A stretch of DNA of 63,993 nucleotides, filler included, from Dugesia japonica (Eukaryota): the NCBI GenBank assembly GCA_001938525.1. It is 6 parts of 6 records of this genome, joined end to end, with 100 filler letters (N's around TTAATTAATTAA, not from the genome) between each part and the next. Parts side by side here need not be neighbours in the genome. Positions count along the whole stretch, not along the records: positions 15,392 to 24,099 come from MQRL01613681.1; 5 more parts are not named here. The stretch is one strand, 5' to 3'. Of the stretch, positions 2,100-24,099 are shown one piece after another (position 1 is the first letter of the stretch; each line of letters opens with the position of its first letter). Position numbers and translations under genes: made by a program. The notes below the pieces were generated by a model. It made no database searches. It saw nothing but the letters and a program-made list of their open reading frames with translations, and had not been told where the DNA came from.

Positions 2100-4180
2100 T
2101 ACGCGAGTCTAAATTCTTCAGCTCATTAGATTCAAGTTAAGCTAGAAGAAGAGTAAAAAAATAAAACAGCCTTTTCAAAAAGTTCAGGTCAATACTGCTT
2201 AAATAGAATGTCGTTTGAAATAGCTGCGGCGCCTAAGACATTCCAGGAACTCATGGCAAAGGTTTTAGATACAACAAAACGAACAACGGTGTATTTAGAT
2301 GATATTCTAATATAATCAAAAAACTTGGAAGAACATTATAAAACACTGAATGAAGTATTTAGTTATATACATCTAGCAGGACTACTTTTGACTCCGTCAA
2401 AATGTCAATTGCTAAGAAAATAGATCAAATTTTTGTGACACATCATAAGTGATAAAAAGTTTCTTGGAAATATGTTGCTATTACAGAGGATTCATAAAAA
2501 ATTACGCAGAGAAGGCTAGAGTACTAGAAAAACCGTGCAGTGTAAATAACAAGAAGTTAATATGGACGGAGAACTGTGAGCAATCATTCAGAGATATGAA
2601 AGAAGCGTTAACGAAGCTACCAATTTTAGTATTTCCGGATGTCAGAAGAGAATTCATACTGGATACAAATGCAAGCTACAATACAATTGGTTCCGTATTA
2701 TCACAAATTGACAATATTGGACAAGAAAAAGTCATAGAATATGGATCACACGCAATAAACAACCATGAATTGGGGTGTTGTATAACAAGAAAGAAGATGC
2801 TGGCGATATTCTATTTTTGTAACCATTTCAATCACTACTTATATGGGTGAAGATTCATTCTATGAACAGACCATAAAGCGATTACGTTTATGTTAACTAC
2901 GAAAAAACCTATAATGGCACAGTTTCAAAATTGGATCAATTACTTAAGTGGATTAGACATTGAATTACAGTATCTGTAAGGCGACAAACATTGCAATGCG
3001 GATTTTCTCTCAAGGCAGGCATGTGGCACATATGTACAATGATGTCACAGAAAGATCCTATAGGGAGCAAATTAAAAACGAGACGATTGAATACAATAAC
3101 AGAGACATCAAAATGGCAAAAATATAATGACGAGATATGAATAGTACGAGAACAGAACAAAGATGGTAAGGAAGAGAAATTCCAATGGATAGATGGTCTG
3201 ATATTAACACAAAACGAAAAGATTTGGATACCAACAGATAGAAAATCGGATATAATCAGAAAAATGCATCAGTTGCTAGCATACGCAGAAACCGAAAAAG
3301 TTGCCAAATATATTAGAGAACATTATGACATGAATAGGTTGTGGCGAAGTGTAAAGGAAATCGTGGACGGATGCAAAGCATATCAGCGTGTGAAGGTGGT
3401 AATAATTAAAACTAAAGAAGAAACTAAAAAATTCGAGTTGGCGAGGCTGTTTGAGAGAATATATATTAATATAGCAAGACCATGGCCAGAAACTTTCCAA
3501 AAAAAAAATATATCATGGTTATTATCGATCAGAATAGTAAATATATATATAATTGACAGCAACAGTAAAACAAGATGAAGAGTCAATAACTCGTGTATTA
3601 AAGGATAACTGGATATTAAAGTTAGGAGTTCCGAGAAATATTCATAAAGATTGTGGTAAAGTATTTGAATCTCAAAAAATGAAGAAATTTGCCGATGAGA
3701 TGAATATTAAACTATGTTTCTGAAGTCATTATCACCATAATACAAATAGACAGGTAGTAAGGCAATTTTGGACTATCATAGACTGGATTGAGGCATCAAT
3801 AGCAGACAGAAACGCAAGGAATTGGAAAAGAATTCTACCAAAAATTGAATTTGCGATGACTGCAACAGTTCAGAAAACCACAGGTAAAAGCCCGACAGAA
3901 ACGGTGTTTGGTAGAAAAATCAACAGAGAAAGATGGTTTTTACCTAGACTAGTTTTCCAACTAGAGTTCAAGAAGGTAGACAATATACCGATGGTTACGT
4001 ACCCAACCAGGAGAACATTGGCTATTAGAGATGCAGTGCTTATCAAGAAGGAAACAAGAAATAAGGATGAGGATCGTTTTGTAGGTCCATTCTGAGTAGC
4101 AAAAAAAATACATGACCGAAGATATCTGATTCGAGATGATCTGGGTTGGACAAATGAAAAGATCAGAAGATTTCTTAAAG
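2100..4180 (+). pseudogene. Gypsy pol remnant (RT-RNase H-integrase)
   Basis: Motifs YLDD, TDHKA, CITRK.MLAIFYFCNHF.HYLYG and integrase zinc-finger/core/GPF, spread over several frames. Confidence 0.88.
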
Positions 4181-15347: not shown

Positions 15348-15907
15348 NNNNNNNNNNNNNNNNNNNNNNNNNNNNNNNNNNNNNNNNNNNNATTATCGTC
15401 GGCAACATTCTTAGCCTTGAAGTTTTCTTGTTACTATTTTTCTTCTAGTTGAAATTGCACTCTATTAGCTTCTATATCATTACTTTTAATTAGCGATTAG
15501 TTCCTGTATATATATTTCTCTTTTCTGTATTTTTCATTTCTCTTTAACTTATCAATGTGAATTTTATACCACTGAAGCCANNNNNATTCAAAGAGATTTT
15601 GTTTCATAAGACGGGATACCGCATAGTCCCGCTGAATTCGGGAATGGGGGATCGTGATGCAAGAGAAGGCATCACACAAATTCTTGCGGCTACTAGGTAT
15701 TATCCCCCAGACGTAAATTTCAATCAGAAATATGAAAAATCGATTAGTAGATAAGAAAAGAAAATAACATCTAAAGCCTAAAAGCCCAACACAATGATAT
15801 TTTAAATTTACAAATAAAATTAACACATTAAAAAATTTACTCTTTTAAAAATACTTAATAGTATTCAAGAATATTTAATTAAACCATCAAAACCTTGAAG
15901 CCCAAGA

Positions 15908-16100
15908 AAAATTATAATTTTTTAAAATTTTTTTGTATTATTAAAAATAACCAAATGTAATTACCAAATTATTAAAATGATGAATAATATTTATATTTTT
16001 AAGGAATTTCAAGCAAAGAATGAAAGAAAATTTTGTGAAAACAATTGGGAAGTCGAAACTTTGATTTTGAAAAGAAAACCAAAAATTTATAAAAAGTCAA
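15908..16100 (+). pseudogene. Diverged duplicate of the 5' flank and first ~40 codons of the 601-aa gene
   Basis: ATTATTAAAATGATGAATAATATT...CAAGC.AAGAATGAA.GAAAA.TTTGTG...GAAACTTTGATTTTGAAAAGAAAA matches 16269-16459. Confidence 0.85.
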
Positions 16101-16337
16101 ATTATTTTAGAAAGGTGTAAAATTTTTGAAAGAATCAATTGTTTTAATGAATAAAGTTGGATTGGAAATTATCTTAATTATATTGTTTCACTAATATAAT
16201 TTATATTATTTATTTATTTATTTAATATTAGTAATTATTTTAAGAAATTTTATCCAATAAAATTAATTAAAATTATAATTTATTTAAATTTTTTTCTATT
16301 TTTAAAACAAATCAGGTTTAATTAACAATTTATTAAA

Positions 16338-18143
16338 ATGATGAATAATATTAATATTTATAAAGAAATTCAAGCGAAGAATGAAGGAAAAATTTGTGTG
16401 ACAAATTTAGAAAATGAAACTTTGATTTTGAAAAGAAAATCACTTTTACAAAAGTCGAAAGCAAAAGAACAAAATGAAAATGAAATAACAATTGAAACAT
16501 TTCATTATGAATTAGATGTGAAACCTTCGACGTGTTGTAGTTTGGAAAATGATAAAGATCAACTTATTCTTGAAATCTCTAAAAATTCAATTGGTGAAGA
16601 AATAATTATAAACAGAAATAAAGGTTCACCCAAAAAAATAATTGATAAAAGTATTGAAAAAAAGCAGAACAAAGAATTTAAAAGAAATTTATCAACTTTA
16701 GAGAAGTTAAAAGCAATTAAAAGATATGATAAAGGGGAAACATTGAAAAGTATTAGTTGTGATATCAAAGCAAGCACATCAGCTATTTTACTTTGGTATA
16801 AAAATAAAGAAAACATACAAAATATCTATTTAAAGTCTTCTGATAAAATAGAAGAAGAAATAATTGAAGAAAATATTTTCATCAGAAAGCAAAGACAACT
16901 AAAACCTAGTATATCATTTTTAGACAAATTAAAAGCAATTAAAAGATATGAAAAAGGAGAAACATTGAAAAGTATTAGTTGTGATATCAACGTATGCAAA
17001 TCATCTATTTTAAATTGGTATAATAATAAAGAAAACTTACAAAATATCTATTTAAAGTCTTCTGATAATATAGAAGAAGAAATAATTGAAGAAAATATTT
17101 CCATTAGAAAGAACAGACGACCAAAATCAAAAATATCAATTTTAAATAAATTAAAAGCAATAAAAAGATTTGAAAAAGGTGAAACATTGAAAAGTGTTAG
17201 TTCTGCTTTCAAAGTAAGTAAATCAACTATTGTACTTTGGTATAATAATAAAGAAAAACTACTAAAGATATATTCCAAATCTTCTGATAATTCAATTTAT
17301 GAAGTAAATGAAAATAAAGATTTATTTGATGTCAATGATAAAACAGAAGAAGAAATCATTGGAGAAAATATTTGTATCAGAAAAAAAAGACGTCCAAACA
17401 TTAAAATATCAATTTTGGAGAAATTAAAAGCAATTAAAAGATTTGAAAAAGGTGAAACATTGAAAAGTGTTAGTTCTGCTTTCAAAGTATGCAATCCAAC
17501 TATTTTATATTGGTATAAAAATAAAGAAAAATTGCAAAATATTTATTCAAAAACCTTTAACAATTCGATTAATAAGAATTTTCAAGTAAATGAAAATAAA
17601 GATTTATTTGATTTCAATGAAGAAATAATTGAAGAAAATATTTTCACTAGAAGAAAACGAAGGCCAAAATCAAAATTATCAATTTTAAATAAATTAAAAG
17701 CAATAAAAAGATTTGAAAAAGGTGAAACATTGAAAAGTGTTAGTTCTTCTTTCAAAGTAAGTAAATCAACTATTTTACTTTGGTATAATAATAAAGAAAA
17801 ACTACAAAAGATATATTCCAAATCTTCTGATGAAGGTTTATTTGATTTCAATGAAGAAATAATTAAAGAAAATATTTTCACTAGAAGAAAACGACGGCTA
17901 AAATCAAAAATATCAATTTTAGAAAAGTTAAAAGGAATAGAGAAATATGAAAATGGAGACTCAATAACCAAAATTGCTGGTAATTTAAATACTTCACCAG
18001 CAACGATCTGCAATTGGATTAAAAATAAAGAGAAATTATTATCAAATAGATCAAATAATAAAGAATACCAAACGGTTTCATTAAAACGGTCAAATTCAAC
18101 AGAAACAAATTTAAATAATTGTAAAAGAATAAAATTAGAATGA
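16338..18143 (+). CDS. Intact 601-aa protein with six tandem pipsqueak/CENP-B N-terminal HTH repeats and no DDE domain
   Basis: Six repeats of (I/L)S.L.KLK.I.(R/K)(Y/F)(E/D).G..(L/I)..(I/V)...F.V..STI..W..NKE.(L/I), each preceded by a basic tract. The C-terminus KRIKLE is NLS-like. AATAAA lies at 18145. Confidence 0.88.
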   Translation: MMNNINIYKEIQAKNEGKICVTNLENETLILKRKSLLQKSKAKEQNENEITIETFHYELDVKPSTCCSLENDKDQLILEISKNSIGEEIIINRNKGSPKKIIDKSIEKKQNKEFKRNLSTLEKLKAIKRYDKGETLKSISCDIKASTSAILLWYKNKENIQNIYLKSSDKIEEEIIEENIFIRKQRQLKPSISFLDKLKAIKRYEKGETLKSISCDINVCKSSILNWYNNKENLQNIYLKSSDNIEEEIIEENISIRKNRRPKSKISILNKLKAIKRFEKGETLKSVSSAFKVSKSTIVLWYNNKEKLLKIYSKSSDNSIYEVNENKDLFDVNDKTEEEIIGENICIRKKRRPNIKISILEKLKAIKRFEKGETLKSVSSAFKVCNPTILYWYKNKEKLQNIYSKTFNNSINKNFQVNENKDLFDFNEEIIEENIFTRRKRRPKSKLSILNKLKAIKRFEKGETLKSVSSSFKVSKSTILLWYNNKEKLQKIYSKSSDEGLFDFNEEIIKENIFTRRKRRLKSKISILEKLKGIEKYENGDSITKIAGNLNTSPATICNWIKNKEKLLSNRSNNKEYQTVSLKRSNSTETNLNNCKRIKLE

Positions 18144-18591
18144 AAATAAATTTTTATTTTTTTTATTTTGCAATTTAATTTTTATTTTTAAAACCATTTT
18201 AACCATTTAAATATTTTTGTACTTAAATAAATTTCAAATCAAGTTGAATGATTTTTCCAATTTTCGCTCTATTTTACCCAAATATTAATAAATCTCCTAA
18301 AACACTTTAGACACGTCACAAAATGCACTAGATAGATCCGCACTTACTTCTGAAATTAAATTTTGTTTATTTCTTTTATTTTAATTTTTTAGCAATTATG
18401 TTGGCCATTGATTTTCTTTTGATTTTGCATTTTTCGATTTACTTATTTTCATTAAACGTCACTTTATCCACGTCATTGCTGATATTTTTGTTTCTTTGTA
18501 TAATTTGTTGATATAATTTCTTTATATCAAAAGGCTGAAATTAAATATAACAGACGTTGAAAATCCTGAGCAAGAATATAATATAGTAATT

Positions 18592-19189
18592 TGATAAAGC
18601 AATAATATTTGTTTATTTATTGTTTTAATTAATTAATTATTGTTTTTAGAAATTGTTAAAGATATTTTGAAATAAGAATTCTCAGATTACCGATGCGATT
18701 CAGTATATTGCGCTCCTGAAATATAATGGTACTGTAATAAAATATTGATGAAGAATCAATATTATCAATGATTATGTGATTATGATTATAAATCTACCAG
18801 TTGTTTATTTTACCAGTTACACATAATTAAAAGTTTAAAAATTTAAATATAAAGCAATAAATTTTNNNNNNNNNNNNNNNNNNNNNNNNNNNNNNNNNNN
18901 NNNNNNNNNNNNNNNTGATAAAGCAATAATATTTGTTTATTTATTGTTTTAATTAATTAATTATTGTTTTTAGAAATTGTTAAAGATATTTTGAAATAAG
19001 AATTCTCAGATTACCGATGCGATTCAGTATATTGCGCTCCTGAAATATAATGGTACTGTAATAAAATATTGATGAAGAATCAATATTATCAATGATTATG
19101 TGATTATGATTATAAATCTACCAGTTGTTTATTTTACCAGTTACACATAATTAAAAGTTTAAAAATTTAAATATAAAGCAATAAATTTT
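18592..19189. repeat. Exact 274-bp duplication on either side of an N gap (probable assembly artefact)
   Basis: 18592-18865 appears identical to 18916-19189. Confidence 0.85.
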
Positions 19190-19389
19190 CGAATACAGTT
19201 GATAGCGAAAGAATCATCTTTGATGCTATCTTTGCAACACTTTGCTTTGGATCTTCTTTGACTATTTGTTTTAAAACAGTTATCAACAGCAGAAGGTCGC
19301 CGAGTTTTGTCTTCATCATTCCATATAATCATGTAGTATAGAAATTTTCAAATGTTTCCAGATTCAAAACAATTGGTATTTCTTTATTT

Positions 19390-19710
19390 GAACTATTATG
19401 AGTTGCTTAAGAGAAACAAGACAATAACATCTGATATTTATTGCGAACAAACGGTTCACAACAAATGTCAGCAATTTGTGGAAAATGACCTGACAATCGA
19501 CATCACTTGATTTTGCTACATGACAATGTCCGGCTGCATACTTCTAAGCAGATAAAAAATTAGTCATTGAAAAACTCAATTTGGAGATTCTACCTCATCC
19601 GACGTATTTACCAGACCCAGCTGGATTTTTATCTGTTCTTATCTCTATCAAAAGTATGCGTGAAATTTCTTTGAAAATAAGTTTAACCTGCAAAGTTGGT
19701 TCCGGGGCGA
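19390..19710 (+). mobile_element. mariner transposase C-terminal remnant
   Basis: YYELLKRNKTITSDIYCEQ, LILLHDNVRLHTS and LEILPHPTYLPDPA resemble mariner HDNARPH and HPPYSPDLAP. Frameshifted. Confidence 0.8.
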
Positions 19711-20329
19711 TATTCTTGATGAGATCGTCTAGTGTGAACAAGATCTGGATTTTTTAGTGTGCTAGATAAAATAGTTATAAATAGATTCTTTAGAGAAAAA
19801 AATTTAAAGAACTAAATTAAAAATGAAGGCATGTAAAATTTCCGCTTAGAATAAATCAGTAGAAAATTGAACAGAAAAATAATACTAGAAGAATAGAATT
19901 CTTTACCGAGTACTTTTGGTGTGATGAAAAAAATTAGCAACTACACTAGTAACTATNNNNNNNNNNNNNNNNNNNNNNNNNNNNNNNNNNNNNNNNNNNN
20001 NNNNNNNNNNNNNNNNNNNNNNNNNNNNNNNNNNNNNNNNNNNNNNNNNNNNNNNNNNNNNNNNNNNNNNNNNNNNNNNNNNNNNNNNNNNNNNNNNNNN
20101 NNNNNNNNNNNNNNNNNNNNNNNNNNNNNTGTTTATGTTGCTAAGAATTTTACGTTCGTCTTTTAAGTTAAGACCATTGACGTCCCTGAAGAAAGTACTA
20201 TTCTTCAATTGGCAAATTTATAATTCTCCGTTTTTCACATTACGAAGCGATAAGTCAATTATGCCTAATTATTATAAATAAGCATTTTTTAGTTTGCTAT
20301 TTAAATTTTATTATTTTTTAAATCCATAC

Positions 20330-20663
20330 TAAGATGAAAATAACGAGAAATAGCGGTGCTGCTTTAAGAAAAAAAGAGAAATGCGAAGGAAGAAGAAACA
20401 GAAAAAGGTAAAGGACCACTGATTAAACATTTTTAATTGTGAACAAACAAGTAATACTGCAAGTAAAGAAACTAATATTGCTGCACATGAAGTAAATCCT
20501 GCCTCTGAAGAAATCATAATAACTACGTCAAGTTCACGTTCTTTAATAACGAGGAATGAAGTGTCTGAATTTTTGAAGGAAAGTAAGATTTTGTCTTAAA
20601 CAATGTACCAAAGCGGCAATATTTAGATCTTCTGGGGTGACAAATACCTTAGCTACGCCACGG
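20330..20663 (+). mobile_element. Possible hAT-like non-autonomous remnant
   Basis: An SGAA..K basic N-terminal-like fragment. The end ...CTTAGCTACGCCAC resembles CAGTGGCGTAGC-type hAT TIRs. Confidence 0.35.
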
Positions 20664-21194
20664 ATTTTGATTAAATAAGTAATAATAAGTAATAATTCTA
20701 ATTTTAATAATTTTTGACTTCATAATAAACACCAGAACCTTTCAATTATTTAAAATGTATCATTATTATCTGTAAAATATATCGCATAATATTTTAATAC
20801 TAAAACAACAAAATGAGTATTTCTTTACTTACGTATAGTCAGTAAAGAAAACTTCACCTATCCTATGTGATCAAAAATGAATATAAATTTATTTAACAAG
20901 ATTTATGACCAAATATTTCATCACACATTCAACTTTGTTTATTTTATTACCGATTTTATGTTACATAATTTCTAAAAACATAATGTTGGTATTAATATTT
21001 ACCTCTTTCTGGGATTCTCTCGTATCTCATGTAACAAATTCAATTTCAGCAGGTAACTTGAATTTTCAAAATGCAAAAACGATACAAGTTTTATGTTCGA
21101 CTTATATTTTGGTTTTTTTCGCTAACAAATAAATTTTTAGAAAACATTGAAAATTAAAACCAACTGAAAGAGAATGATGAAAATAAAAAAAGAA

Positions 21195-21195
<1 letters not shown>

Positions 21196-21260
<65 letters not shown>

Positions 21261-21340
21261 NNNNNNNNNNNNNNNNNNNNNNNNNNNNNNNNNNNNNNNN
21301 NNNNNNNNNNAATAATAATAATAATAATAATAATAATAAT
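21196..21340. repeat. (AAT)n microsatellite spanning a gap
   Basis: Pure AAT run. Confidence 0.95.
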
Positions 21341-21949
21341 TGTGAGATATGACTAAGAATAATATAATATTTTCATATTGACCTGTATATATTGACTGTA
21401 CATATTGACTGTTTGCATGTGTGTCTGATTTTAGTGTTCAGACATTATTACATAACCGATTCCTCAAAAGCTATACATAATAAATAATAATAATAAAGCT
21501 ATATAATAATAACGATAATAATAATAAATATAATACTTTATTTATTTTGAAATAGAGTAAATTTTAATATAACATTATAGTTGTAAATAAAATTAAAATT
21601 ATTGATAAACTAGATTAAATATTTAAATCAACATGAACAAGTGTATAGATTATAAATGGAAGTGTATGTATGGATCTGCGTTTTGAATTTTATATATACG
21701 GGTGCTAAAAATTAAGCAAACCCGGTAGTAAGATTATCGACGAATAATAATAGCAATTATGAACTTGACAAGCTGTTATCAGTAATGATAATGAGCAATT
21801 ATAAATTTTTAACGAAATCGGCAAATTACGGTAACAGACGTTGTCCCTAAAGATGGGTAAGGTAGGACTTATTAATATGCTACGTAATATCTATTTTTGT
21901 GAAGTAGAATATGCTCTTAAGATATTGCATAAAGATGTTGGTTTTAATA

Positions 21950-23400
21950 GTATAAAATTAAATTTGAAATTGAATTTGAGTATAGAAAACCATTTTCAGT
22001 GCCACTCAGAAGAGCACATGTTTATCAAAAGGCTGTATAAAGCACAACACCATTGTATGTACTATCTTTGAGGAGAAATCCAGGAACTCCTCTCATGAAT
22101 ACATCTAGACTTTCAAATGCTTTTGACTGAAAACCATGCTGTTTCTTATCTATGGTTCTGCTAAATACTAGACTACTCTTGATGGATTCAATCTCATCAA
22201 CTTTGCTGATACTTGTATCTACTGCATATTTACGTTAAGTGACAACATGAATTGGACTAACTTTCAGTCTTACATAATTCAAATACTAATATTCGCACCA
22301 TATTGAAGACATGAAGATCCTCATCAACAACTGCTAAATACTGCACATTCTATTCCTTGACATCTACTAATACTTTAGTGTTACCATTGGAAAAGAAATC
22401 GAACTAACAATAATCAGATTATTCAGACCAATAGTTACATATATAGAAAAAATTCATCACTTCATACTGACATATTGGAAAACTTTCATTACCAACCGAA
22501 TCTTTCTGTTCACTCGTTCAAATTTAAAAATCTACAACATTTCAAATGGAAAATTAACAAACCACCACACTCATGAAATTAATAACCGTCTTTTGTCTAG
22601 GCAGACATCAGAAAACGAATTAAATCCATTTACAGTCTCACATCTTCTGTTTCAAGTGCTTATCTTTACGTTCCCGTGAATTTATGCGGACTTATTGATT
22701 TAAGTGCCATCAAAATATACAATTTAATCCATTTTACCCACATTCCTAAGTTCTAACTGCGACAATATGGAGACTTCAGGCATTATTAACTATACAGCAC
22801 AAACAGGAAAGAAGTGAATTGTACACTCAAACCTGGAATACACACTCGATCTGCTTAATACAAGATGAGAAGGGGAAAGAATTTCAAACAGCACATCTCA
22901 TCTCATGAAAGATCACAAGAAATAACATCAAGTTTATTCTCAATGAACAAAGAATATGTATAAATGTAAATTTCAAACTAGTCAACAATATCATTACAAA
23001 ACTGCACGAAAAGTTTTTATCTACACAACTTGTATCATTTGGATGACATTTTTAATTCGGAAGAAATTAGAGCAGATCACTACGCAACAGCAGTAGCTAA
23101 AGAGAATTTTTCCTCAAATAACAATTTCTTTACGGGTAAATAACATCTCAGAATGGTATTCAATACATCTGACACGAACAGACACTCTACTTGTCAGAAG
23201 TGGATCTCAGAATAAAATCACCTATAAAAGCTGTTGTAAAACACATGTTACTTAGAAACACAAAATTATATCTTGTGCCACTCCCTAAGCAACAAAACTT
23301 TAATTATAAACAGACACAATAGAATTCTATAATTCCTGTTCAAAGCCATTAGCTCTCAGTATCCAATATATCCATAATAAAAGATAAATGATGTCTCTTA
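21950..23400 (+). mobile_element. Highly decayed non-LTR retrotransposon remnant
   Basis: RT-like DF(S)NAFD at ~22108-22128, FAD(D)L-like at ~22200, and a possible Cys/His knuckle remnant near 23230-23280. Boundaries are uncertain. Confidence 0.4.
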
Positions 23401-23700
23401 TCTGCTGAAAATTGTGAGTTGATATATGAATAGAAAAACTAAAAATAAGTTGCATCACTGTCAAATCGTGCTTAAAATCTTAATACTTGGTTGTCAGAAA
23501 AGTTAGTGACTCAAAAATGATAAAAATGATTTAAAAAAATGAGAAAAATTGTCATAAACAACAAAACCTTTCCTTTATTGAAAACAGTGCATCAAGTCAA
23601 ATATCAAATAAAAACAAATTAACATAAATGTTGTAGAACACTTTTATTACTGCAGATTGTCATCAAAGTCGCGCCGATCTACTCCTAATTAATGATGAGC

Positions 23701-24099
23701 AGTAGACAGATAGTAGCGGTCATAGCCAGCACACATTCAGCAAGCGCCCCGCCCCCTTTACGTAATCAAATTTAATAGGATTAAGTGGCTCTACATTTTC
23801 CTGTGTATGTAGTTGGGAAAATTTTTTATGCTTTTTAAGCGGTAATGTGGTGTTACTTTTTTCCCTGTGAGAATTTTTTCACTAGGAATTTATTCGGTGA
23901 GGTCGAATGAGGTCAAATGTTTTCCTCGGCATTGATGATTTTGGGTGATATAGGTGAAATTGGTCCAAAATTTCCTCCGTAAGGTCGAATAAGGTTGATT
24001 TTTGGATGGTTCAGGTGAATTTGGTCAATTATTTCCTCGGGATTGGGTGGTTTGGGTAATTTTTGGGCGTTTTGGTCAAATTTTTTCTTCGGCATTGAT
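23701..24099 (+). repeat. Polinton left terminus/TIR with G/T-skewed subterminal repeats
   Basis: AGTAGACAGATAGTAG...ATAGCCAGCACACATTCAGC is shared with 44772. Degenerate TTTCCTCGG.ATTG / GGTGAA.TTGGTC repeats lie at 23915-24099. Confidence 0.8.

What the first reader, a model, noticed from the sequence alone, without database searches (positions are those of the whole stretch)
16338..18143. Intact single-ORF protein made of six tandem psq/CENP-B HTH modules with variable recognition helices
Seen: this is the longest undisrupted ORF in a window where most transposon genes are broken. It holds six ~60-90-aa units (acidic linker, basic tract, HTH). The first helices are almost invariant, while the predicted recognition helix varies: ASTSAILLW, VCKSSILNW, VSKSTIVLW, VCNPTILYW, VSKSTILLW, TSPATICNW. 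Known: this HTH is the TIR-binding N-terminus of pogo/Tigger transposases and of CENP-B/pipsqueak proteins. Here the second HTH and the DDE domain are absent. Inference: a domesticated modular DNA reader that expands by internal duplication. It could be a transposon- or satellite-binding factor analogous to tandem zinc-finger arrays. This is my best candidate for an undescribed system.
Basis: partly seen in the sequence, partly recalled or inferred. Interest (0 to 1): 0.75.

Follow-up and report, generated by a model that had tools for sequence, protein, structure and literature searches.

The report
Gene with six tandem psq-type HTH modules
An intact gene in a very AT-rich eukaryote-like genome encodes a protein built as a string of six transposase-derived helix-turn-helix DNA-binding modules. 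The array grew from two modules to six by internal duplication and differs between modules mainly in the DNA-reading helix; this layout resembles Drosophila Pipsqueak but comes from a family with no name in the databases searched.

Summary
ORF 16338-18143 (+) encodes 601 aa with six CENP-B_N/psq-type three-helix HTH modules (Pfam E 3.4e-32). Each module follows a basic arm, and acidic linkers separate them. The ORF and its flanks hold no Tc5-type HTH and no DDE domain, and no terminal inverted repeats flank it.

It is a constrained coding gene. Its one close relative, P0002 (57% identical), has the same leader and tail and is also intact. Of 5000 simulations placing the 192 observed differences at random, none stayed free of stops. 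ML dN/dS is about 0.35.

P0002 has only two modules, so four were gained here by in-frame duplication of 222-273 nt units. Among modules 1-5, the end of helix 2 through the start of helix 3 took 18 nonsynonymous and 1 synonymous change. The rest of the HTH took 13 and 7. This suggests diversification of the reading surface but does not prove it.

Most likely it is a nuclear multivalent DNA reader for long or repeated AT-rich targets. Whether it serves the host or a selfish unit is open: distant relatives sit on small circular or tandem single-gene contigs and share a CCAAT motif about 90 nt upstream of the start codon. Drosophila Psq (four tandem HTH) is a precedent, so this is a new variant of a known kind. 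Expression, targets and source organism are untested.

The parts
16248..16264 (+). Conserved upstream motif TTTTATCCAATAAAATT (CCAAT box), 87 nt before the ATG
   Evidence: TATCCAATA lies 87 nt before the ATG here and also in L005. It lies 95 nt before in L001 and 89 nt in L007. Variants TACCCAATG (L006) and TTATCCAAT (L008) lie about 92 nt before. The chance expectation is 0.2 matches per 24 kb on both strands.
16338..18143 (+). Complete single-exon CDS of 601 aa, with its TGA stop
   Evidence: The start and stop align with those of homologue P0002. An in-frame stop lies 4 codons upstream of the ATG.
16338..16646 (+). N-terminal leader, aa 1-103; no known domain and predicted disordered
   Evidence: No Pfam family. 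pLDDT is below 35. It is 49% identical to the P0002 leader, with ML omega 0.27.
16647..16850 (+). Module 1 (aa 104-171): basic arm plus three-helix HTH
   Evidence: (module HMM E 3.7e-30).
16869..17072 (+). Module 2 (aa 178-245)
   Evidence: (E 7.8e-32).
17091..17294 (+). Module 3 (aa 252-319); this is the module that was modelled
   Evidence: AlphaFold model pLDDT 81.5 with helices at 17-29, 33-40 and 44-52. Best structural match 2ELH.
17364..17567 (+). Module 4 (aa 343-410)
   Evidence: (E 5.8e-32).
17634..17837 (+). Module 5 (aa 433-500)
   Evidence: (E 5.5e-31).
17868..18071 (+). Module 6 (aa 511-578): the divergent terminal module, counterpart of module 2 of P0002
   Evidence: E 3.2e-27. 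It is 61% identical to the second module of P0002.
18072..18140 (+). Conserved C-terminal tail (aa 579-601, ...TVSLKRSNSTETNLNNCKRIKLE)
   Evidence: It is 78% identical to the P0002 tail and has the lowest dN/dS in the gene (0.03-0.37 depending on method).
18145..18150 (+). AATAAA directly after the stop codon; a possible polyadenylation signal, though weak evidence in AT-rich DNA
   Evidence: Read from the sequence.
15908..16081 (+). Truncated upstream copy of the proximal promoter and first 35 codons; 83% identical, lacks the CCAAT motif, ends in a stop after 47 codons
   Evidence: (D5).

Best explanation
This is a functional, single-exon chromosomal gene for a nuclear DNA-binding protein built as beads on a string. 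It has a disordered leader of about 110 aa, six CENP-B_N/psq-type three-helix HTH modules, and a conserved 23-aa tail. Each module is preceded by a basic arm (RK.RRPKSK), which by inference acts as an NLS and/or a minor-groove arm. Flexible acidic linkers separate the modules.

The HTH type derives ultimately from the N-terminal DNA-binding domain of pogo/Tigger-like transposases, but nothing else of a transposase remains. The array grew from a two-module ancestor state, still seen in homologue P0002, to six modules by in-frame tandem duplication of 222-273 nt units of the first-module type. The copies kept the helix 1-2 scaffold and diverged in the residues from the end of helix 2 through the exposed face of helix 3.

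Inferred mechanism: each module reads a short site, and the array reads a long composite or repeated AT-rich target with high avidity. Drosophila Pipsqueak does this with four psq HTH on (GA)n, and Bab does it with psq plus an AT-hook on A/T-rich DNA. The conserved tail would then recruit a partner.

Shown: the architecture, the fold, coding constraint, the gain in module number, and the excess of amino-acid changes in the recognition region. Inferred: DNA binding itself, the kind of target, nuclear localisation, and a host rather than selfish role.
For: - Six CENP-B_N stretches, E 3.4e-32.
- Confident three-helix module model. The best sequence and fold matches are the Dan psq domain 2ELH and CENP-B 1HLV.
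- The full-length model shows six confident bundles (pLDDT 78-89) joined by low-confidence linkers.
- No Tc5 HTH or DDE in the ORF or flanks and no TIRs.
- Homologue P0002 (276 aa) has the same start, leader, tail and stop but only two modules.
- There are 192 differences over 768 aligned nt. Random placement gives a mean of 12.9 stops, and 0 of 5000 simulations had none.
- ML omega is 0.35 overall and lowest in the tail (0.03 by ML; 0.21-0.37 by the counting methods).
- Within the array, 101 accepted changes occurred with no stop, P 4e-4 to 5e-6.
- The recognition region has 18 nonsynonymous to 1 synonymous change, against 13:7 in the rest of the HTH (Fisher p 0.044) and 54:28 elsewhere (p 0.011).
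- The variable columns 38-39, 43-45 and 48-49 are also among the most variable across 35 modules of other proteins.
- The CCAAT motif at a fixed distance from the ATG is conserved in relatives.
- Precedents: Psq with four HTH domains (PMC10379775) and Bab with psq plus AT-hook (PMC5752203).
Against:
- Copy number in the source genome and the organism itself are unknown.
- Counting methods give omega 0.6-0.7, and about 1 for single modules, so constraint on the amino-acid sequence is moderate at best.
- I defined the recognition region after seeing the alignment. The p-values are marginal, and 18:1 is not significantly above the neutral ratio on its own (my estimate p about 0.07).
- Gene conversion between modules could distort the counts.
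- Distant relatives on circular or tandem single-gene contigs fit a selfish unit as well as a host gene.
- A truncated 5' copy lies just upstream.
- The basic arm lacks the RGR core of a true AT-hook.
Confidence: 0.55

Rival explanations
1. The gene is the single cargo of a small selfish or amplified unit, either a circular episome or a tandemly amplified 1.8-3 kb cassette of promoter plus poly-HTH gene. The window copy would be a chromosomal, perhaps integrated, copy. The HTH array would bind repeats of its own unit for maintenance, segregation or autoregulation, rather than serve the host.
For: - L007 (P0004, six modules) is a 3085-nt k141 contig with an exact 141-nt terminal overlap. That indicates a 2944-nt circle or tandem unit with only one ORF.
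- L006 (P0003, four modules) has ends that repeat at 98% identity with a 4-nt indel, giving a unit of about 1.83 kb with one ORF.
- All units share the CCAAT motif at -87 to -95 despite only 25-40% protein identity.
- The window has a truncated 5' copy 361 nt upstream.
- Omega is moderately high.
Against: - The window gene lies in ordinary scaffold context, with a mariner-like relic and microsatellites, and the unit is not repeated there.
- The flanks of L005 and the window share only about 100 nt of proximal promoter.
- No replication, integration or transposition gene is present.
- No relatives were found in plasmid, phage or IMG/VR collections.
- An exact k-mer overlap also arises from plain tandem gene arrays.
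Confidence: 0.2
2. The ORF is the interior of a multicopy non-autonomous pogo/Tigger element that retains only the duplicated N-terminal HTH of its transposase.
For: The HTH type is that of pogo/Tigger transposases. In L009, a distant relative, psq modules are followed by Tc5-type HTH sequence. The piece carries another transposon relic.
Against: - No inverted repeats better than 70-86% AT-rich chance matches flank the ORF here or in L005.
- No Tc5 or DDE remnant is found in the ORF or flanks.
- Only one close homologue exists among about 15 billion proteins, and no long paralogue has the tail.
- Both homologues are intact, where about 13 stops are expected under neutrality.
- The start, stop and promoter motif are conserved, but the outer flanks are not.
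Confidence: 0.05
3. The open frame is a non-functional by-product of recent minisatellite-like expansion of a 222-273 nt unit and is evolving neutrally.
For: It is a tandem DNA repeat with 76-86% unit identity. Counting-method dN/dS is near 1 for some module pairs.
Against: - Modules differ by 8-44% at the nucleotide level, yet no stop or frameshift has arisen (P 4e-4 to 5e-6).
- The homologue in another organism is intact across 25% nucleotide divergence (0 of 5000 simulations).
- All unit lengths are multiples of three.
- ML omega is 0.35.
Confidence: 0.03

Closest known systems
Drosophila Pipsqueak (Psq)
   Same: Both use a tandem array of psq/CENP-B-type HTH modules as the DNA-binding part of a non-transposase nuclear protein. 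Psq has four HTH domains and reads (GA)n repeats (PMC10379775).
   Different: This protein has six modules rather than four, placed centrally rather than at the C-terminus, and no BTB/POZ domain. Every module has its own basic arm, and the linkers are acidic. It matches the Pfam CENP-B_N model rather than HTH_psq. Psq did not appear among the hits of the exhaustive search, so there is no detectable orthology.
Drosophila Distal antenna (Dan, CG11849) psq domain, PDB 2ELH
   Same: This is the best solved-structure match to the module by sequence profile (E 9e-15) and by fold (TM 0.61, 35% identity).
   Different: By my recollection Dan has a single psq domain followed by a long disordered region; this protein has six.
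CENP-B and pogo/Tigger transposases (TIGD, JRK, Abp1/Cbh)
   Same: The first HTH is of the same type (PF04218; 1HLV TM 0.66).
   Different: The second (Tc5) HTH, the DDE_1-derived domain and the dimerisation domain are all absent, and there are no TIRs.
Drosophila Bric-a-brac composite psq + AT-hook DNA-binding domain
   Same: A psq HTH is paired with an adjacent basic motif, and both are needed to bind DNA (PMC5752203, citing Lours et al. 2003). Here a basic arm precedes each HTH.
   Different: The arm here (RK.RRPKSK) lacks the RGR core and lies N-terminal to the HTH. Bab has one psq module and a BTB domain.
Tandem C2H2 zinc-finger arrays (KRAB-ZNF type)
   Same: The resemblance is functional only: a modular array that changes module number by internal duplication, with changes concentrated at DNA-contact positions.
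   Different: The fold is unrelated and there is no repressor domain. Evidence for diversifying selection here is marginal, and no target is known.
Unnamed poly-HTH array proteins in public assemblies (P0001, P0003, P0004, P0009, P0010 and others)
   Same: They carry 3-6 tandem modules of the same consensus, are AT-rich single-exon genes, and (for P0001, P0003, P0004 and P0009, whose loci were read) have the same upstream CCAAT motif.
   Different: They are only 25-40% identical and lack the leader and tail of the window protein. Two lie on circular or tandem single-gene contigs.

Membership tests
Pfam CENP-B_N (PF04218) HTH domain | A match to the family model above its gathering score | tested here: met
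   110.3 bits against a cutoff of 21.2, E 3.4e-32, six stretches.
Pfam CENP-B_N (PF04218) HTH domain | Three-helix homeodomain-like fold | tested here: met
   Model pLDDT 81.5 with helices at 17-29, 33-40 and 44-52. Best fold matches are 2ELH and 1HLV.
Pipsqueak-type proteins (BTB + tandem psq array) | Tandem repeats of the psq-type HTH | tested here: met
   Six modules.
Pipsqueak-type proteins (BTB + tandem psq array) | N-terminal BTB/POZ domain | tested here: not met
   No BTB hit at E up to 1. The leader (aa 1-103) matches no family.
Pipsqueak-type proteins (BTB + tandem psq array) | Sequence-specific binding to a simple repeat such as (GA)n | not testable with these tools
   This needs SELEX, EMSA or ChIP.
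pogo/Tigger transposase or autonomous element | Second HTH (HTH_Tnp_Tc5) and a DDE_1 catalytic domain | tested here: not met
   Absent from the ORF and from flanking open frames.
pogo/Tigger element (autonomous or non-autonomous) | Terminal inverted repeats with a TA target duplication | tested here: not met
   Only AT-rich pairs of 70-86% complementarity turned up, and none is shared with L005.
pogo/Tigger element (autonomous or non-autonomous) | Multiple copies in the genome | not testable with these tools
   Only this piece of the genome is available. Public protein sets hold one close homologue.
CENP-B-like domesticated proteins | A retained transposase-derived core and a C-terminal dimerisation domain | tested here: not met
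   No such domains found.
Domesticated (host) gene in general | Purifying selection on the coding sequence | tested here: met
   0 of 5000 simulations stayed stop-free, and ML omega is 0.35.
Domesticated (host) gene in general | Single-copy syntenic orthologues across species, and expression | not tested

The most novel reading that the evidence does not exclude
This is a lineage-specific, fast-evolving family of poly-HTH array readers. It would be a helix-turn-helix counterpart of KRAB zinc-finger arrays. Module number changes quickly (2, 4, 6) and the recognition helices are under diversifying selection, in an arms race with repeats or transposons. Alternatively, the family defines minimal selfish units that consist only of a CCAAT promoter and a poly-HTH gene, persisting as small circles or tandem arrays.
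Probability: 0.15. Interest if true: 0.75.

Novelty: new variant of a known kind. Interest (0 to 1): 0.45.

Why it matters
Tandem zinc-finger arrays are the textbook case of a DNA reader that evolves by adding modules and changing contact residues. For helix-turn-helix domains, the main described example of such an array is Drosophila Pipsqueak.

This gene has several features of an evolvable HTH array:
- Two homologues differ three-fold in module number.
- The scaffold is conserved, and the changes concentrate on the reading helix.
- The gene has clearly been kept open by selection.

If the modules prove to have distinct short specificities, the family would show that transposase-derived HTH domains can be built into programmable readers. 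It could also point to the repeats or mobile elements they police in very AT-rich genomes. As it stands, it is a well-supported annotation of an unnamed gene family, not a new mechanism.

Tried and rejected
- **Earlier findings and sequencing runs.** I therefore have no expression data and did not lay reads.
- **Word-index protein searches.** The whole protein, P0002, and module 6 plus tail gave only P0001, P0003 or nothing. The exhaustive HMMER search was the informative one.
- **Exact look-up of the window protein.** It is not on record.
- **Other collections.** Plasmids, phages, IMG/VR, JGI metagenome contigs and GTDB genomes gave no relatives. The first alignment (A2) was too diverse for that tool.
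- **A seventh, degenerate module in the leader.** The module HMM gave E 0.08 at aa 31-79. I rejected this as not significant.
- **TIR search**, **Rfam** and the **bacterial promoter/terminator scan** found nothing meaningful.
- **Organism identity.** A search for the run accession in papers found nothing. I considered dictyostelids, anaerobic fungi, Hydra and others on composition alone and could not decide.
- **Module phylogeny.** It was too poorly resolved to date the duplications. Only nearest-neighbour identities are used.
- **Counting-method dN/dS.** It is unreliable at GC3 of 14.5%, so I preferred the ML estimate and the stop-avoidance tests.

Full report
**What is there.** The piece (window 15392-24099) is very AT-rich, with 14-33% GC in 500-nt windows. 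It carries N gaps, (AAT)n microsatellites and a decayed mariner-like transposase fragment, so it looks like eukaryotic nuclear DNA. ORF 16338-18143 (+) is 601 codons from ATG to TGA. The next longest stop-free stretch that does not overlap it is 115 codons. The chance of 601 open codons at this composition is about 3e-25.

Pfam gives CENP-B_N (PF04218) at E 3.4e-32 with six stretches, plus weaker generic HTH models. There is no HTH_Tnp_Tc5, DDE_1 or BTB. The DNA contains six copies of a roughly 237-nt unit spaced 222, 222, 273, 270 and 234 nt.

**Anatomy.**
- The leader (aa 1-103) matches no family and is modelled with pLDDT below 35.
- Each module has an acidic linker end (EEIIEENI), a basic arm (RK.RRPKSK), and then three helices.
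- A module model built from an alignment of 41 modules has pLDDT 81.5, with helices at module positions 17-29, 33-40 and 44-52.
- The best solved relatives are the psq-type domain of Drosophila Distal antenna (2ELH; profile E 9e-15, TM 0.61) and CENP-B (1HLV; TM 0.66).
- The single-sequence full-length model shows six confident bundles (pLDDT 78-89) joined by low-confidence linkers, like beads on a string.
- A 23-aa tail closes the protein.

**Relatives.** An exhaustive HMMER search of 1.84 billion representative proteins gave only 40 hits at E up to 1e-3.

The one close relative, P0002, is 276 aa, 57% identical over its best aligned stretch, and comes from a 1406-nt Logan contig (L005). It has the same start, a 49% identical leader, a 78% identical tail and the same stop position, but only two modules. 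These correspond to window modules 1 and 6. Window modules 1-5 are each other's nearest neighbours, with P0002 module 1 next. So four modules of the first type were gained here, in frame.

More distant hits (25-40% identity) are nearly all arrays of 2-10 HTH modules themselves. None carries a name in any source. No relatives were found in plasmids, phages, IMG/VR, JGI metagenome contigs or 185,579 prokaryotic species genomes. No long paralogue with the tail was found.

**Is it a constrained gene?**
- The window and L005 CDSs differ at 192 of 768 aligned nucleotides. Placing that many changes at random with the observed spectrum creates a mean of 12.9 stop codons, and 0 of 5000 simulations had none.
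- Within the array, 101 inferred changes among modules 1-5 produced no stop, where 8-12 are expected (P 4e-4 to 5e-6).
- Counting methods give dN/dS of 0.6-0.7. GC3 is 14.5%, which depresses apparent dS. The ML estimate with codon frequencies is 0.35 overall, 0.27 for the leader, about 0.5 for the modules and lowest in the tail (0.03 by ML on 23 codons; 0.21-0.37 by the counting methods).
- The protein is therefore kept by selection but evolves fast.

**Recognition helix.** In modules 1-5, columns 20-37 (KLKAIKR[YF][DE]KGETLKS[IV]S) are nearly invariant, while columns 38-49 vary. On a parsimony reconstruction over the module tree, the counts are as follows.

| Region | Nonsynonymous | Synonymous | Fisher p vs recognition region |
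|---|---|---|---|
| End of helix 2, turn, start of helix 3 | 18 | 1 | - |
| Rest of the HTH | 13 | 7 | 0.044 |
| Everything else | 54 | 28 | 0.011 |

The invariant I47 and W50 are core positions. The variable positions 44-46 and 48-49 lie on the exposed face of helix 3. The same columns are among the most variable across 35 modules of other proteins.

This fits diversification of the DNA-reading surface, with caveats:
- I set the region boundaries after looking at the alignment.
- The sample is six modules.
- Gene conversion was not excluded.
- 18:1 alone is not significantly above the neutral ratio (my estimate p about 0.07).

**Transposon interior?** No inverted repeats better than AT-rich chance pairs flank the ORF here or in L005. 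No transposase remnants lie in the flanks. Beyond about 100 nt of proximal promoter, the flanks of the two homologues are unrelated. That rival is unlikely.

**Things that complicate a simple host-gene reading.**
1. A truncated copy of the proximal promoter and first 35 codons lies 361 nt upstream, at 15908-16081 (83% identity).
2. A CCAAT-containing motif (TATCCAATA or a close variant) sits 87-95 nt before the ATG in the window, L005, L001-L004, L007, L006 and L008, although the proteins are only 25-57% identical. The chance expectation is about 0.2 matches per 24 kb.
3. L007 has an exact 141-nt terminal overlap equal to the assembler's k, giving a 2944-nt unit. L006 has imperfect terminal repeats, giving a unit of about 1.83 kb. 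Each unit holds only the poly-HTH ORF.

These relatives are thus circular or tandemly repeated single-gene units, which leaves room for a selfish-unit reading. I rate that at about 0.2.

**Mechanism.** Most likely this is a nuclear multivalent DNA reader. Six HTH modules with basic arms on flexible linkers bind a long composite or repeated AT-rich target, and the conserved tail engages a partner. The analogies are Psq, with four HTH domains that read (GA)n (PMC10379775), and Bab, where a psq motif and an adjacent AT-hook together bind DNA (PMC5752203). Lineage-specific expansions of HTH-Psq transcription factors are documented in animals, for example 43 in Hydra (PMC10027918). DNA binding, the targets and localisation are inferred here, not shown.

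**Verdict.** The finding is real and the domain call is correct. The gene is intact and constrained, and it expanded internally. It is a new variant of a known kind (psq/CENP-B-type HTH arrays) in an unnamed, very sparsely sampled family, not a categorically new system.

Noticed in passing
window 18592-18865 and 18916-19189: Two 274-nt stretches, 100% identical, flank a 50-N gap. This is most likely a gap-closing or assembly artefact rather than a biological duplication.
   Followed up: no
window about 19400-19800 (+), and 19170-19330 (-): A decayed mariner-like transposase fragment with several stops. Pfam gives a weak Transposase_1 hit (E 5e-4), and HDNVRLHTSKQ and LPHPTYLPDP motifs can be read in the translation. 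A possible N-terminal HTH piece lies on the opposite strand.
   Followed up: partly
window 23911-24099: Short G/T-rich direct repeats (GGTCAAAT.TTTTC.TCGGCATTGAT) spaced 163 nt apart at the piece's edge. The neighbouring 22100-23700 region is C-skewed at about 32% GC and has no recognisable ORF.
   Followed up: no
L007:1-141 = 2945-3085; L006:1-198 ~ 1836-2030: Contigs carrying the distant relatives P0004 and P0003 close on themselves, in units of 2944 nt and about 1832 nt. Each contains only the poly-HTH ORF plus 1-1.8 kb of non-coding DNA. They are either small circles or tandem arrays.
   Followed up: partly
window 16248-16264; L005:386-395; L001:927-936; L007:1399-1407; L006:297-305; L008:175-183: A conserved CCAAT-box motif sits 87-95 nt upstream of the ATG in all family members examined, despite low protein identity. 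It could be an NF-Y-type promoter element or the protein's own operator.
   Followed up: partly
L010:6001-7398 (P0008): A bacterial protein (on a 2.66-Mb contig) has eight near-identical HTH_Tnp_1-type modules and a hydrophobic N-terminus. It lies next to AbiEi/AbiEii, ParE and HTH_3 genes, so tandem HTH arrays also occur in a prokaryotic toxin-antitoxin or defence neighbourhood.
   Followed up: no
L009:1583-4162: Three consecutive ORFs (220, 250 and 373 aa) together carry at least seven psq-type modules, followed by Tc5-type HTH sequence. This looks like a split or intron-containing gene of a less AT-rich eukaryote, a second architecture for poly-psq arrays.
   Followed up: partly
L001: about 2250-2316: The contig ends in an (ATT)n run followed by Illumina TruSeq adapter sequence (AGATCGGAAGAGCACACGTCTGAACTCCAGTCAC...). 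This is adapter contamination in a public metagenome assembly.
   Followed up: no
window 16559-18181 (-): Long antisense open frames (up to 199 codons) run opposite the CDS. They are a by-product of its AAR/GAA-rich codon usage, not evidence of a second gene.
   Followed up: no
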